NCBI GenBank assembly: GCA_964057225.1
Contig: OZ059898.1
Location: 5,084,001-5,148,000, forward strand
DNA: 64,000 bases
Reading direction: 5' to 3'
DNA from: Auanema rhodensis
Taxonomy: Eukaryota > Animalia > Nematoda
In this document: in pieces, positions 3,301-12,978 of the stretch
Layout of the letters: each line of letters starts with the position of its first letter
Position numbering within the stretch: the stretch's first letter is position 1
Made by a program: the position numbers and the translations under genes
Notes under the pieces: model-generated
Told to the model about the DNA's origin: nothing
Database searches by the model: none
Seen by the model: the letters and a program-made list of their open reading frames with translations, nothing else

Positions 3301-6300
3301 TAAAATCTGGATCATACAGAAGATCAAGGCATTCGTCATAATACACATCGTTTTCAGAATCAGACACAGGGGGAGTAGGTGGAGTCCAAGACTTTAACAG
3401 AAAGTTAAACGGTGCTAGATAGTTTGTAACTTACAGGCATGAACTGGTCAAAAATATCAGGACCATCGGCAAGTATCTGAAGATAAAGAAAACTAGTTTT
3501 TTTTGCTAAAACATTTGGTTTCTTTTCATATTTTGAAATATGCAAACCATTTTTCAAAACAAAATCGTGTTACTCAGTTTTCGTAGCGGTTCTAAGGCAT
3601 GCAGCCTGCGGTCTATCGACGCCCGACCCGTGCCGTCTCGACACCTGGCGATCAGTTGAAAATATTAAAATCTTCGATCTGACCGTCCTCTTCGAGGCCG
3701 AGGTGCGTGGTCTGTCGAACGAATCGAACGACGCGCCACAGACCGCAGACTGGCGCCACGGATCAGGAGACGATAAATAACAGACATAACATACTTCATA
3801 TACCACACGTCAACAATTTACAAAACAAGCTATAAATATTCTGGGACAGGGATGGGACAATATAAAAGCTAACAAAGTATCATTGAAAAAAATGTTATAA
3901 AGTAATAAAGTCTACCGAGCTGGATACCCGAGATAATTAACCGAGAATATCGCAATATGCGAAGCATGTGTTAGGAATATGAGTGAAAAACCTGCATAAT
4001 ACCAAGGCAAAAAGGAGGGATAAGATAACGGAAGTTATACACCTCATTTTAGCTTAACAAAATGAGACATGATTAAAATCTATCAGTCTTCAACAGAAGA
4101 CCCCCGGCCTTCAGATCGATCACGCCTAAACGAAAAACGAGGTCTAGCATAATCGCCAAGACTAGGTCTTACATCTTCATGTTGTGCTGGTACTACACGC
4201 ATAGACGTGGGGGGTGTGACAAAAACAAGTCTCGTAGGGACATTCGATCTCCCTTGAATTGGTATATTTGAAGGCCGGGTAATATAAGTATTAGTGGAGG
4301 AAACTACTTGATAACGACCTGTAGTTGCCCGATCAGCGTGAAAATATGGCCGTTGAGGGCTAATTACTTTGACAGGTAACATTAAGCGTGGACTAGAAGA
4401 GGAGGGTGATGTGGATAAAATACGATGTGGTGCTCCTCTCTCTGGAAAGACTGGCATAACAGTAGAAGGTCTCTGTGTACTGCGGGGAGACTCTTCAGAA
4501 TTAGATTTCGAAGATGTTGGAACAAGAAATTCGGCACGTGGCCTTTGAGGAAGTGAGGAATGCGGCCGTTTCAAAGTGGTTTTAATAATAGATTTAGGAG
4601 GTAAAGAGGAAGCGGAAGAGACAGTGGCCTGAATCTCCACTTTTTTAGGTGGAGCTGGAGCTGCTGCAACTGGAGCAGGTTCTGGAGAAACCGGAACAAA
4701 ATCAGACTCCAAGGGTACTCTACGAGGACGACCCGGTCGCCTTTTCATAGCAATACCATTTATAATGGTTTGGGGAGAAGAATTGTTAGAAATAGTCTTA
4801 GCACGGTTTACGGCTTTCTTAACGGCCGAGCGAGCCGCGATCTGTTTCGAAGAAGTAACTAGAGAGGCACTACGTCTAGATGAATTTTTGAGGGGCGAGC
4901 TTTTCTTAGCTAAAGAAAGTTTACGGGCAGATTGGCGAGAGGGTACCAGGCGGGGACGAGCATTGTTTTGAGCGGCGCGGTCACGACGACGGCGAGACCG
5001 TACCTCATCAAGAAGTGATCCACATCCATAGAAATCGTCCTCCACATTATTTTCATCGTTCATAGCTTTCTCATGAGCCTTTTGCCAATCATCTTTCTTT
5101 TGTTCAATCAACGCCTTAATAGAAACATAAAAAATACAAAAAATTTCGGGTAAATTATTACCTCAGCTTCTTTTACTTCTTCTTCGAACTCTGGCTTATA
5201 CTCTGCTTCAAGGAAATTTACAGCGTATCTCTCGATGGGCTTGAGCTAAACAAATATTTGACTAACATTTATACATAACTACAAACCTGTCCAATTAGTT
5301 CAATATATTTATCATCCATGATATCATCGCCACCAGAAAGCTGACTCGAGGTTAACTTTTCCTCAAATTCGGCAGAGTCAACTTTAGCTTCAGCTGAAGC
5401 CATCTTGGCTGCTGCCACGTCTTGTTCGTCTTCCAATGAAGACATAGCCTTGTCGAGCTCTTTTTGATCGCGTGGAGCACTAATAGCGGTCGATATTTCT
5501 TCCGCTCCAATCTCTCCAGCAAACAAATCCCTAAAAATTCGAATTATTATATGATTTTACACTATATAACAATAGGTTACCTAATATTATCAGATTGCTT
5601 GAAAAAATCAGGTGTAAAGCCAGCTTCATCAATTGCTAGCTCACCGAGACGTCTTTTTTGAATAGCTTTTTTCAATATATTTTCTTCTATAGTTCTCTCC
5701 GAAATCAGACGATATATGGAAACACTTCTAGTTTGTCCAATCTAAACAAAGACTGTGAAAAGCTCCAAATCGGCCAACTTACTCTATGGCAGCGATCTTG
5801 AGCCTGTGCATCCATTGTAGGATTCCAATCAGAGTCATAGAAAATAACAGTGTCGGCTCCGGTAAGATTAATTCCTACACCACCCGATCGGGTTGAAAGG
5901 ATGAAGCAGAATATTTTATTATCCGCATTAAATCTCTCCATCATTGCTTGACGCTGTTCGATTCCAGTGGAGCCGTCCAAACGGAAGTATTGATAGCCAT
6001 GGTAAGAAAGGAAAGCCTGTATATAAGAATAAATATTATTCCAAATATTGCTCATACCTGTAGTACATCCAGCATTCTCGACATTTGAGTGAAAATTAAG
6101 CATCGGTGCTTGTACAAGTACAGTTCACGTAAGAGGTTTGCTAGTATTTGCAATTTTCCACAATCATATTCGATCAATCTTAGTTCTGGGAATTGAAGTC
6201 GCGTATCTAACATAACTTTATGAGCATGGTCAGAACACCTTTGATATATCGATCTTAAATCATATCTGGTAAATCAATAAAACAGTTATTTGAAAAACCT

Positions 6301-11802: not shown

Positions 11803-12978
11803 TTACTTCCCTTTATTTTTTGTCATTTTGCTATCAATCGCATCAGCAATGAGACCTACAAACACTATTCCAGTACCTAACACTTGTCTTTCACTTAGCG
11901 GATGATTCATAAACACAACAGAAATTATAATAGTGAACAGCTTTCTTGTAGTTGTAATAATTGAGCATGTTAAAGGCGAGAATTCACTGATAGTTTTGAA
12001 GATAAAATACTGCAAGATAAAATTAAACATTTTAGACAACCGATTTTGTACCTGTCCACCACAACTGGCCAAAGCCAAAAAGCATAAATCACTAAAAACA
12101 GATGGATGACGTTTGATAAACGATATAAAGCTGAACAGTTCACCGGTAGCAACAAGACTGAAAAAACAATAACTTGATTCATAAAAAAAAAAGTGGCTAA
12201 CCCAATAAGCAAGTAAATTGAGGAAAACAGATTCATGTAATACATCATACTCAAGGCACTTTTACGATAACTACGGTTGATCCTATCTTGAATAGATGTT
12301 GTAGTGCCATCCATAGCAAGTGAAAGAAGCTAAATTTCTTGATTCTATACATTTATAAAACAATATATACCAAAAGAATTTCTCCTAGACCATATCCACT
12401 GCCACTACTAGATTTTTTATCTTTATATAGAAACATGGCTACTCCTACAACAATCATCAACACAAAAAAGTATTTACGAGCATGGTATTTTTTTGCAGCA
12501 AAGAACACTCCAAAAATCATAACAGGAATAGGTTTGCAGGATTTGGCTAGAACCTATAATGAATAAAATACTATTAGCGAAAAATAGAAAAACGATTACC
12601 TGTGTTGGATATGGAAGATACTGTAAAGCTTGATTACTGAAAAGCATAGCAGCTAAATAACTACCTGCACAAATACTATATGTTTTGCTAGGAACATTGT
12701 CTATATCATTGGAAGGTCTGAATATCTTAGCGAAAATTGTGTTAGCAGCGCACATGAAGAATACTAAAGCTAAGGTATAAGTGAACTTTTCACCATTATC
12801 ATATTTTCCTTGAACTCTAAAACAATATAAGTTGGTACACGATATGACAGAATCAAACATACACTCGTTCTTGCTGTATCCCAAAATAAAAATAACATAA
12901 CAGGATTCCTCCAGCACATAGGAAAAAGTGGAATGCTTCGTTTAAGAATGTCCGCTGTTTAACTACTTGCCCTGCCAT
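11803..12978 (-). CDS. hut-1: UDP-galactose/ER nucleotide-sugar transporter (SLC35B1/UGTrel1 family)
   Basis: Spliced product ILLCYFYFGIQQERV|VQGKY..EKFTYTLALVFF, SNQALQYLPYPTQ|VLAKSCKPIPVMIFGV, LSLAMDGTTTSIQDRI, FIFKTISEFSPLTCSIITTTRKLFTIIISV. C-terminal KNKGK fits a KxKxx ER-retrieval signal. TTTAG acceptor 1 nt before the ATG. Confidence 0.93.

What the first reader, a model, noticed from the sequence alone, without database searches (positions are those of the whole stretch)
3565..3775. Unassigned ~200-nt GC-rich multi-helix RNA structure inside the isoform-deciding intron of ssl-1
Seen: a ~59% GC island in AT-rich intronic DNA. On the transcribed (minus) strand, CAGUCUGCGGUCUGUGGCGC (3752-3733) pairs with GCGUCGAUAGACCGCAGGCUG (3622-3602) over ~20 bp with one bulge. 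Its three non-Watson-Crick positions are all G-U wobbles (A-C on the other strand), which points to selection on RNA structure. Outer helices: CGUGGCG/CGCUACG and AUCGU/ACGAU. Inner helices: CACCU(C)GGC/GCCAGGUG, CCUC-GAA-GAGG, CGGUCAG/CUGAUCG, GAAGAU/AUUUUC, GUGUCG-AGA-CGGCAC. A competing helix GGUCUGU (3744-3738)/ACAGACC (3715-3709) is mutually exclusive with the main stem. I find no SRP, RNase P/MRP, snRNA, tRNA, SECIS or TTAGGC-template motifs. Inference: either a cis element governing intronic polyadenylation versus splicing to the 3476 acceptor (~90 nt downstream), or an intron-hosted ncRNA.
Basis: partly seen in the sequence, partly recalled or inferred. Interest (0 to 1): 0.8.

Follow-up and report, generated by a model that had tools for sequence, protein, structure and literature searches.

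The report
Conserved RNA rod in ssl-1 intron
A roughly 200-nucleotide RNA hairpin sits just after the stop codon of the short form of the chromatin remodeller SSL-1; it is almost identical between Auanema worm species, similar hairpins lie at the same spot in hookworm relatives, and it probably helps decide whether the message ends there or is spliced on to the long form.

Summary
The gene is the ssl-1 orthologue of an Auanema species.

**Gene context.** RNA contigs confirm an intron at 3477-5003. It holds a read-through ORF that ends at 4083, which gives a short isoform.

**Conservation.** A 237-nt block (3594-3830, minus strand) is 94% identical to Auanema sp. JU1783. Outside one apical loop it is 98-99% identical. 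Exons are 69-80% identical and the flanking intron 32-42%.

**Structure.** The RNA folds as a rod whose two ends pair: 3798-3747 with 3638-3593. The z-score is -5.2 to -5.9 on the sense strand only.

**Other species.** Sense-specific rods lie in the same interval in Necator, Ancylostoma, Parelaphostrongylus and Mesorhabditis. The three strongylids show modest covariation.

**What it is not.**
- No Rfam family, tRNA or second copy was found.
- It has no telomerase template and no C/D, H/ACA or Sm motifs.

**Best reading (about 0.4).** It is a cis-acting structure at the intronic poly(A) site. Its GU-rich 5' strand follows poly(A)-signal-like hexamers directly. The main rival is an intron-hosted ncRNA.

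No reads showing RNA 3' ends could be obtained.

The parts
5004..5114 (-). Upstream constitutive exon (...GSLLDE). The 5' splice site GT begins at 5003.
   Evidence: The loose end of the RNA contig at 3478 equals the reverse complement of 5031-5004. The peptide is 92% conserved in JU1783.
4083..5003 (-). Read-through ORF of the short isoform (composite terminal exon). The stop codon is at 4083-4085.
   Evidence: ORF list. Unspliced RNA contigs X1 and X2 cover it. The last 33 residues are 88% conserved in JU1783, and the motif RPxLGxYxRPRxxFR is found in Pristionchus, Necator, Ancylostoma, Parelaphostrongylus and Mesorhabditis.
3831..4082 (-). Presumed 3'UTR of the short isoform, upstream of the element. 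It has no poly(A)-signal-like hexamer.
   Evidence: 57% identity to JU1783. None of 18 hexamer variants occurs here in either Auanema species, but this depletion is not significant.
3594..3830 (-). Ultraconserved block: the whole selected unit.
   Evidence: 222/237 identical to JU1783. It is 98-99% identical outside 3656-3686. Organism B contigs match only 3594-3825.
3817..3822 (-). UGUAAA, a poly(A)-signal-like hexamer in the conserved leader.
   Evidence: It is conserved at the aligned column in JU1783.
3795..3800 (-). UAUGAA, a poly(A)-signal-like hexamer overlapping the base of the rod.
   Evidence: It is conserved in JU1783. The three strongylids carry GAUAAA directly 5' of their rod.
3747..3798 (-). 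5' strand of the outer rod. It is G/U-rich (63% G+U).
   Evidence: It pairs with 3638-3593 in about 40 bp, including several G-U pairs; P is 0.98-0.999.
3593..3638 (-). 3' strand of the outer rod. It contains UGCAUG at 3598-3603.
3709..3744 (-). Hairpin A (GGUCUGU/ACAGACC). It carries the words UGCGGUCUG..CGUCG..CGAUUCG, which are shared with the strongylid apical hairpin.
3639..3707 (-). Hairpin B. Its apical part (3656-3686) is the only variable region.
   Evidence: apical part 71% identical.
3733..3752 (-).
   Evidence: It can pair with 3602-3622 (20 bp, 3 G-U), but only when 3755-3832 is kept unpaired: -72.3 against -89.2 kcal/mol.
3477..3593 (-). Unconserved tail of the intron. The 3' splice site AG is at 3477-3478.
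   Evidence: 32-42% identity to JU1783.
3435..3476 (-). 42-nt exon ([14 protein letters not shown]), the first exon specific to the long isoform.
   Evidence: RNA contig joints. It is conserved in JU1783, Diploscapter and Necator.

Best explanation
The element is a cis-acting RNA structure built into the intronic poly(A) site of the short SSL-1 isoform. It sets the balance between ending the mRNA there and splicing from 5003 to 3477 to make the long isoform.

**Shown**
- The intron holds a conserved read-through ORF and stop codon, so the short mRNA must end between 4082 and 3477.
- The only poly(A)-signal-like hexamers between the stop and the rod (UGUAAA, UAUGAA) lie in the conserved leader and at the rod base.
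- The 5' strand that follows them is G/U-rich.
- That strand pairs over about 40 bp with a strand 110-200 nt downstream, on the sense RNA only.

**Inferred**
- The G/U-rich 5' strand serves as the cleavage region and downstream element of the poly(A) site.
- Once RNA polymerase has made the 3' strand, the rod closes and masks that region.
- Cleavage and polyadenylation can therefore happen only in a short time window during transcription. Transcripts that miss the window are spliced to the long form.
- The very conserved apical hairpin would be a protein-binding module that tunes this.
For: **Gene architecture.** The RNA contig joins 5004 to 3476, and unspliced contigs run at about one third of exon depth. 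The C-terminus of the short isoform is conserved across six genera. Gene predictors split the gene at this point in several species.

**Selection.** The block is 94% identical, and 98-99% outside one loop. Exons are 69-80% identical and the neighbouring intron 32-42%.

**Structure.**
- z is -5.19 and -5.89 on the sense strand against -2.45 on the antisense strand in Auanema.
- In strongylids z is -4.05, -4.13 and -5.03 on the sense strand against -1.15, -1.77 and -3.47 on the antisense strand.
- The element is the most stable GC-corrected 200-nt window of the whole gene in 4 of 5 loci.
- In strongylids 93% of cells are paired, against 22-51% when the partners are slid. There are 4 compensatory pairs against 1.3 in shuffles, reached in 5 of 500 shuffles.
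- The two stem substitutions in Auanema (3733, 3646) keep pairing only on the sense RNA, as G-U.

**Link to the poly(A) site.**
- UGUAAA and UAUGAA are conserved at the rod base. GAUAAA lies directly 5' of the rod in all three strongylids.
- The 5' strands are 63-68% G+U.
- Conservation is asymmetric. The 5' strand is 77-99% identical and the 3' strand 49-86%. Eleven of the 12 Necator/Ancylostoma differences lie in the 3' strand. This fits a 5' strand that does two jobs and a 3' strand that only has to pair.

**Coverage.** The X2 contig ends inside the element, although it is deeper than X1.
Against: - No read-level 3' ends were available, so the actual cleavage site is unknown.
- The hexamers are weak variants, and their absence upstream is not significant (P = 0.07-0.24).
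- Hookworms have other candidate signals (AGUAAA, AAUAAU) 130-180 nt upstream of the rod.
- Near-total invariance within Auanema, including loops, is more than a simple mask would need. It looks more like a ribonucleoprotein RNA.
- There are no compensatory changes in Auanema, because there are too few substitutions.
- Homology between the Auanema and strongylid elements is not significant by sequence (z 2.0, 26 of 500 shuffles). The covariance models only cross-hit weakly (E 0.088 and 0.42).
- Organism B contigs run 32-53 nt past the rod.
Confidence: 0.4

Rival explanations
1. It is an intron-hosted, stable, trans-acting ncRNA, the core of a ribonucleoprotein. It would be processed from the ssl-1 intron or from the short-isoform transcript, and would ride on a gene expressed in the germline, as nematode telomerase RNA does.
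For: - Conservation is at the level seen for snRNAs, including loops and junctions, and exceeds that of the coding exons.
- The apical hairpin is 92-100% conserved among strongylid families.
- In organism B, runs from several studies hold short contigs centred on the element.
- There is precedent for hidden intronic ncRNAs in nematodes: terc-1 lies in an nmy-2 intron (PMC12921731).
Against: - There are no class motifs: no telomere template of 6 nt or more, no C/D or H/ACA boxes, no Sm site, no 3'-terminal ACA and no oligo-T terminator.
- No Rfam hit was found at E<=10 for Auanema or Necator.
- The 3' strand evolves fast in strongylids.
- Organism B contigs extend 32-53 nt beyond the rod on the 3' side, so no defined end is visible. 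Their depth is only 2-4, and GC bias could explain them.
- The element stays at one syntenic spot, tied to the isoform switch, in five genera.
Confidence: 0.25
2. The rod lies inside the mature short-isoform mRNA. It is either a structure that brings the hexamers at its 5' base next to a cleavage site just 3' of it (as the Rex-responsive element does in HTLV-1), or a terminal 3'UTR element for stability, localisation or translation.
For: - Conservation of the block stops abruptly at 3594. By eye the next ~25 nt keep some shared letters (AACC..AC.AAAC), although the pairwise alignment scores them at only 32%.
- The hexamers lie at the 5' base of the rod in both clades.
- The X2 RNA contig runs more than 110 nt past the hexamers, to 3682.
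- In the window, CA plus UUUUGUUUUG lie 22-37 nt after the rod.
- A second candidate signal lies about 65 nt after the rod at aligned positions: UAUGAA at 3530 and AAUAGA in JU1783.
Against: - No conserved U-rich element follows the rod in JU1783, organism B or the strongylids.
- The X2 contig stops about 90 nt short of the rod's end, despite depth 60.
- No poly(A)-tailed loose ends were reported (table 7).
Confidence: 0.15
3. It is one of the generic long double-stranded regions typical of ssl-1 introns and UTRs. These are bound or edited by ADARs or other dsRNA-binding proteins and are linked to robust expression, with no specific role in isoform choice.
For: - C. elegans ssl-1 is reported to have 12 edited introns/UTRs (PMC6239182).
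- An imperfect duplex of about 40 bp is long enough for dsRNA-binding domains.
- Diploscapter and Pristionchus have inverted-repeat-like structures in the same interval.
Against: - Such regions usually come from repeats and are not conserved in sequence. This one is single-copy in all sequence searched and is ultraconserved.
- It is stable on one strand only, unlike the strand-symmetric repeats in Diploscapter and Pristionchus.
- The RNA contigs show no A-to-G differences, although contigs drop rare variants.
Confidence: 0.1
4. It is a transposon or MITE relic, a DNA-level element such as an enhancer, or a chance GC-rich palindrome.
For: - It has long inverted complementarity.
- The Diploscapter counterpart looks repeat-derived.
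Against: - There is no second copy in the 64-kb window or in 180 kb of related loci.
- It is absent from the E. coli genomes, prokaryote genomes and metagenome contigs searched.
- It is syntenic in at least 5 genera.
- The folding advantage is strand-specific, with G-U pairs (A-C on the other strand), which points to RNA rather than DNA.
Confidence: 0.05

Closest known systems
Competition between a weak intronic poly(A) site and a 5' splice site in a composite terminal exon (the classic case is immunoglobulin mu secreted versus membrane mRNA; from general knowledge)
   Same: A read-through ORF with its own stop and 3' end lies inside an intron. The splicing of that intron gives the longer protein. 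A G/U-rich tract follows the candidate signal.
   Different: Here the G/U-rich tract is one strand of a conserved 200-nt rod. No such masking structure is part of the immunoglobulin model. Use of the site has not been shown here.
Poly(A) signals controlled by RNA structure: the HIV-1 poly(A) hairpin (occlusion) and the HTLV-1 Rex-responsive element (juxtaposition) (from general knowledge)
   Same: A stable stem-loop either includes the poly(A) signal and cleavage region or sits between the two, and it changes 3'-end processing.
   Different: Those are viral elements. This one is a cellular nematode element, it has no sequence similarity to them, and its effect on processing is untested.
Drosophila domino isoforms DOM-A and DOM-B (PMC7239659)
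   Same: The orthologous remodeller gene yields two C-terminally different proteins from one gene through alternative processing.
   Different: I know of no conserved RNA rod described at the fly switch. The Pfam scans here did not establish the domain content of the nematode long isoform.
Editing-enriched dsRNA regions in C. elegans ssl-1 (PMC6239182)
   Same: Intramolecular double-stranded RNA in introns and UTRs of the same gene family member.
   Different: Those regions are numerous, are mostly derived from inverted repeats and are not reported as conserved in sequence. This element is single-copy, strand-specific and ultraconserved, and editing was not observed.
Intron-hosted nematode telomerase RNA terc-1 (PMC12921731)
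   Same: A structured RNA of 200-330 nt hidden in an intron of a germline-expressed gene, missed by homology searches.
   Different: This element has no TTAGGC template (no 6-mer of the repeat on either strand) and no H/ACA tail.

Membership tests
Any Rfam 15 family | A covariance-model match at or near the gathering score | tested here: not met
   No match over the element at E<=10 in the window, JU1783 or Necator. The only hits were chance ones below 20 bits beside it or on the other strand.
Telomerase RNA (nematode terc-1 type) | A template of about 1.5 telomere repeats (permutation of GCCUAA; the Auanema repeat is TTAGGC) | tested here: not met
   No 6-mer of the repeat in the block on either strand, and no 7-mer in 3400-5100. 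The repeat is taken from the bioRxiv preprint 10.64898/2026.08.27.747507.
Telomerase RNA / H/ACA RNAs | Hairpin-hinge(ANANNA)-hairpin-ACA, with ACA 3 nt from the 3' end | tested here: not met
   The only ACA is internal, at 3715. There is no terminal ACA and no two-hairpin layout.
C/D box snoRNA | C box RUGAUGA near the 5' end, D box CUGA near the 3' end, and a terminal stem | tested here: not met
   There is no C box. The two CUGA are internal. The weak DdR6 hit at 3778-3886 (E = 1.3) lies mostly outside the rod and is judged to be chance.
Sm-class snRNA / SL RNA | An Sm site (RAU3-6GR) flanked by stems | tested here: not met
   No match.
Pol III small RNAs (sbRNA/Y RNA, 7SK) | An oligo-T terminator at the 3' end. 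For sbRNA, also the UM3 promoter (PSEB plus GTATA) and a UUAUC stem motif. | tested here: not met
   GTATA (3803-3799) and UUAUC (3776-3772) do occur. No run of four or more T follows the rod in the window, JU1783, organism B or the strongylids. PSEB could not be tested because the consensus was not available in text. There are no Rfam hits to Y_RNA, sbRNA or 7SK. A resemblance to the human 7SK GAUC hairpin is recalled from memory only and is not collinear.
MITE / transposon-derived inverted repeat | Multiple dispersed copies, terminal inverted repeats at the element's ends, and target-site duplication | tested here: inconclusive
   No other copy was found in the 64-kb window or in 8 loci. The conserved unit extends beyond the inverted arms, no duplication flanks them, and the element is syntenic in several genera. 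The whole genome could not be searched.
miRNA precursor | A hairpin of about 60-100 nt with one about 22-nt arm conserved and a small terminal loop | tested here: not met
   The rod encloses a branched 110-nt interior in Auanema. Conservation spans more than 140 nt in strongylids. There is no mir family hit on the sense strand. Small-RNA data were not available.
ADAR-edited dsRNA region (EER) | Clustered A-to-G differences between RNA and DNA over a long duplex | tested here: inconclusive
   The X1 and X2 contigs show no other letters, but contigs drop minority variants.
Structured cis-element at an alternative poly(A) site | The RNA 3' end maps at or next to the structure, and the structure changes use of the site | not testable with these tools
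   Only positional evidence exists: the hexamers at the rod base and the contig ends.

The most novel reading that the evidence does not exclude
The rod is the core of a previously unknown, trans-acting ribonucleoprotein RNA of rhabditid nematodes, hosted for more than a hundred million years in the same ssl-1 intron. Alternatively, and almost as novel, it is a co-transcriptional RNA timer that gates an intronic poly(A) site and so apportions one remodeller gene into two different complexes.
Probability: 0.25. Interest if true: 0.8.

Novelty: new member of a known kind. Interest (0 to 1): 0.62.

Why it matters
SSL-1 is the single nematode counterpart of SRCAP/p400/Domino. In flies, the two C-terminal isoforms of Domino define two distinct chromatin complexes (PMC7239659). 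How the isoform ratio is set is not known in any animal.

This element offers a concrete handle on that question. It is more conserved than the coding exons, it lies exactly at the decision point, and it is small enough to test. Experiments could delete the rod, open it, or re-close it with compensatory changes in Auanema, where genome editing exists.

The element is also absent from Rfam. It therefore adds a conserved nematode RNA structure that homology tools do not find.

Tried and rejected
**RNA classes rejected**
- Known RNA family: Rfam at E<=10 was run on three sequence sets and found nothing. ARAGORN found no tRNA.
- Telomerase RNA, C/D, H/ACA, Sm snRNA and a Pol III gene: all rejected on motif tests.
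- 7SK: I recalled two 11-mers shared with human 7SK. They are not collinear, they come from memory only, and Rfam 7SK does not match, so I dropped the idea.

**Origin**
- Bacterial or contaminant origin: no match in E. coli genomes, prokaryote genomes or metagenome contigs.
- Auanema programmed-DNA-elimination motif: that motif is a 29-bp palindrome at chromosome break sites, which does not fit this element.

**Coding**
- The 78-aa ORF at 3570-3806 is broken by the 1-nt deletion in JU1783 and organism B.

**Searches that led nowhere**
- Full-text search for the stem sequences found no paper.
- The 342-aa read-through ORF had no protein homologues in the word-indexed search, which was swamped by low-complexity candidates.
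- The scan's own notes hold nothing on this element beyond the sister note on the alternative terminal exon.

**Tests that gave weak or no support**
- Cross-clade homology by sequence: the local alignment is not significant, and the reciprocal covariance-model hits are weak.
- Depletion of poly(A)-signal-like hexamers upstream of the rod: not significant.
It is therefore not the conserved function.
- Pfam scans of the downstream ORFs gave no SANT or other domain.
Full report
**What is at the coordinates.**
- The stretch 3565-3775 is a GC-rich island: GC is 0.564, and 0.593 for 3594-3760. The flanks have GC 0.28-0.33.
- Folded alone, the minus (transcribed) strand gives -83.1 kcal/mol with z -2.81. 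The plus strand gives z -1.46.
It has one bulge and three G-U pairs.
- There is no other copy in the 64-kb window.
- No Rfam family matches at E<=10 and no tRNA is found.

**Which gene and which organism.**
- The minus strand carries an SNF2/HSA remodeller gene.
- A profile search and cluster names identify it as the nematode ssl-1 orthologue.
- The window is not C. elegans. By tblastn the closest protein is that of Auanema sp. JU1783.
- A hut-1-like transporter gene lies upstream, as in Auanema, Pristionchus and the hookworms.
- RNA contigs from organism A are 100% identical to the window.
- A preprint on Auanema rhodense gives TTAGGC as the telomere repeat.

**The intron decides the isoform.**
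- RNA contigs X1 and X2 join exon 3435-3476 to a sequence that is the reverse complement of 5031-5004. The intron is therefore 3477-5003.
- A separate unspliced contig runs from the upstream exon through the intron. Its depth is 37 against 110 for exons in X1, and 60 against 163 in X2.
- In X2 this contig stops at 3682, inside the element.
- Without splicing, the reading frame continues for 307 codons to a stop at 4083.
- The last 33 residues are 88% conserved in JU1783. The motif RPxLGxYxRPRxxFR recurs in Pristionchus, Necator, Ancylostoma, Parelaphostrongylus and Mesorhabditis.
- Gene predictors end the gene at this stop and call the downstream exons a second gene in JU1783, Diploscapter, Necator, Ancylostoma and Parelaphostrongylus.
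- This agrees with the scan's sister note s1-378859.

**Conservation within Auanema.**
- I fetched the JU1783 locus (L002). The element is at the syntenic place, L002:10236-10475, in the same orientation as the gene. blastn gives 93% identity over 256 nt.
- The locus as a whole aligns at 67-73%.
- Identity by segment:

| Segment | Identity to JU1783 |
|---|---|
| Block 3594-3830 | 222/237 |
| 3687-3798 | 111/112 |
| 3594-3655 | 61/62 |
| Apical part 3656-3686 | 71% |
| Exons | 69-80% |
| 3'UTR-like region | 57% |
| Intron just downstream | 32-42% |

- A third species, organism B, gave short RNA-run contigs that match only 3594-3825. They carry the same variants as JU1783. Their flanks are close to JU1783's (by-eye comparison with the L002 alignment) and unlike the window's.
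It includes 75 AU/GU-rich nucleotides on the 5' side.

**The structure.**
- Once the 5' extension is included, the fold changes. Strand 3798-3747 pairs with 3638-3593 over about 40 bp that include several G-U pairs.
- The 204-nt RNA has z -5.19 in the window and -5.89 in JU1783, with 0 of 200 shuffles as stable. The plus strand reaches z -2.45 and cannot form the outer rod.
- In the full unit the outer rod has pair probabilities of 0.98-0.999.
- The few substitutions lie in the apical loop and an internal loop. There is also a deleted bulged A.
- Two substitutions lie in stems (3733 C>U, 3646 A>G). Both keep a pair only as G-U on the sense RNA.
- Auanema shows no double compensatory change, because there is too little variation.

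**Beyond Auanema.**
- blastn and a covariance model built from the two Auanema sequences found nothing in the Diploscapter or Pristionchus loci.
- In 57 kb of Necator and Mesorhabditis sequence the model's only hit (E = 0.088) fell on the sense strand of the syntenic interval in Necator. That spot is an island of GC 0.65-0.68.
- The Necator sequence folds as an unbranched rod: -105.4 kcal/mol, z -4.05. Its antisense strand gives z -1.15.
- It has clear homologues at the same place in Ancylostoma (88% over 298 nt) and Parelaphostrongylus (86% over 141 nt). These have sense z of -4.13 and -5.03, and antisense z of -1.77 and -3.47.
- In the three-species alignment 93% of cells pair, against 22-51% with slid partners. 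Four pairs change on both sides, against 1.3 in shuffles (reached in 5 of 500), and 11 pairs change on one side compatibly. With three sequences this support is modest.
- In 4 of 5 loci the element is the most stable GC-corrected 200-nt window of the entire gene.
- Mesorhabditis has a sense-favoured hairpin in the same interval (z -5.2). Diploscapter and Pristionchus have strand-symmetric, repeat-like structures there.
- Sequence similarity between the Auanema and strongylid elements is not significant (z 2.0). The reverse model search is also weak (E = 0.42).
- They do share collinear words (UGCGGUYUG..CGUCG..CGAUUCG) that are unique in the window. I chose those words after seeing both sequences.
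- I therefore treat the elements as positional and structural counterparts that are probably homologous.

**Clues to function.**
- Between the stop at 4083 and the rod, the only poly(A)-signal-like hexamers of 18 variants are UGUAAA (3822-3817) and UAUGAA (3800-3795, at the rod base). Both are conserved in JU1783.
- The three strongylids carry GAUAAA directly 5' of their rod.
- The 5' strands are 63-68% G+U, like a downstream element of a poly(A) site. The 3' strands are richer in C and A or G.
- In strongylids the apical hairpin is 92-100% identical, the 5' strand 77-99% and the 3' strand only 49-86%. Eleven of the 12 Necator/Ancylostoma differences lie in the 3' strand.
- This fits a 5' strand with a sequence-specific job as well as pairing, and a 3' strand that only has to pair.
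- Hence the preferred model: a poly(A) site whose cleavage and downstream region is closed by a complementary strand made 110-200 nt later. Intronic polyadenylation is then limited to a short window during transcription.

**Caveats.**
- The hexamers are weak variants.
- Their absence upstream is not significant.
- Hookworms have other candidate signals upstream.
- I have no read-level 3' ends.

**Rivals.**
- An intron-hosted stable ncRNA fits the extreme conservation and has a recent nematode precedent (PMC12921731). However, the element lacks every class motif tested, and organism B contigs run past the rod without a defined end.
- The rod could be a terminal structure of the short mRNA, or could bridge the signal to a cleavage site beyond it. 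This fits the sharp end of the conserved block at 3594.
- A generic ADAR-type double-stranded region, as reported for C. elegans ssl-1 (PMC6239182), does not explain the single-copy status, the strand specificity or the ultraconservation.
- A transposon relic, a DNA element or chance are unlikely.

**Verdict.** This is a real, selected, strand-specific RNA structure that is not in Rfam. It lies at the switch point between the two SSL-1 isoforms. Within Auanema it is conserved nearly to the letter, and it has structural counterparts across rhabditid nematodes. Its function is inferred, not shown.

Noticed in passing
window 4083-4185 (-); L002:9912-10010; L004:14851-14943; L005:19657-19749; L007:22482-22547; L008:24426-24470; L006:15069-15122: The C-terminus of the short SSL-1 isoform carries the motif RPxLGxYxRPRxxFR. 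It is conserved from Auanema to Pristionchus, strongylids and Mesorhabditis, so the short isoform is ancient and its tail is probably functional.
   Followed up: partly
L002, L003, L005, L007, L008 gene tables: Public annotations split ssl-1 into two genes exactly at this intron in at least five species. The downstream half is called as a separate protein with no Pfam domain.
   Followed up: partly
window 11803-12917 (-): A hut-1-like nucleotide-sugar transporter gene lies directly upstream of ssl-1. The same neighbourhood is seen in Auanema JU1783, Pristionchus, Necator, Ancylostoma and Parelaphostrongylus.
   Followed up: partly
window 3598-3603 and 3804-3808 (-): UGCAUG (a Fox-1/ASD-1-type site) sits in the 3' strand of the rod, and GUGUG (a SUP-12-type site) in the leader. 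The strongylid apical hairpin has GCAUGUG. These motifs are short and could be chance.
   Followed up: no
window 3778-3886 (-): A weak Rfam match to a Dictyostelium C/D snoRNA (19.9 bits, E = 1.3; the gathering score is 90). It has AAUGAUAC at 3884. I judged it to be chance.
   Followed up: partly
L003:20111-20300: In Diploscapter the structure in the same interval is a strand-symmetric inverted repeat. A canonical AAUAAA follows immediately at its 3' base.
   Followed up: partly
L007:20551-20750: In Ancylostoma there is a second strongly sense-specific structured window inside ssl-1: -54 kcal/mol against -15 on the other strand, z about -5. It is unexplained.
   Followed up: no
L008:30101-30300: In Parelaphostrongylus there is a near-perfect strand-symmetric inverted repeat (z about -12) downstream of ssl-1. 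It is probably a transposon.
   Followed up: no
window 5351-5650 (-): This is the second most structured stretch of the gene (z -3.4 to -4.1). It overlaps the exon that encodes ...[13 protein letters not shown]... and its flanking intron.
   Followed up: no
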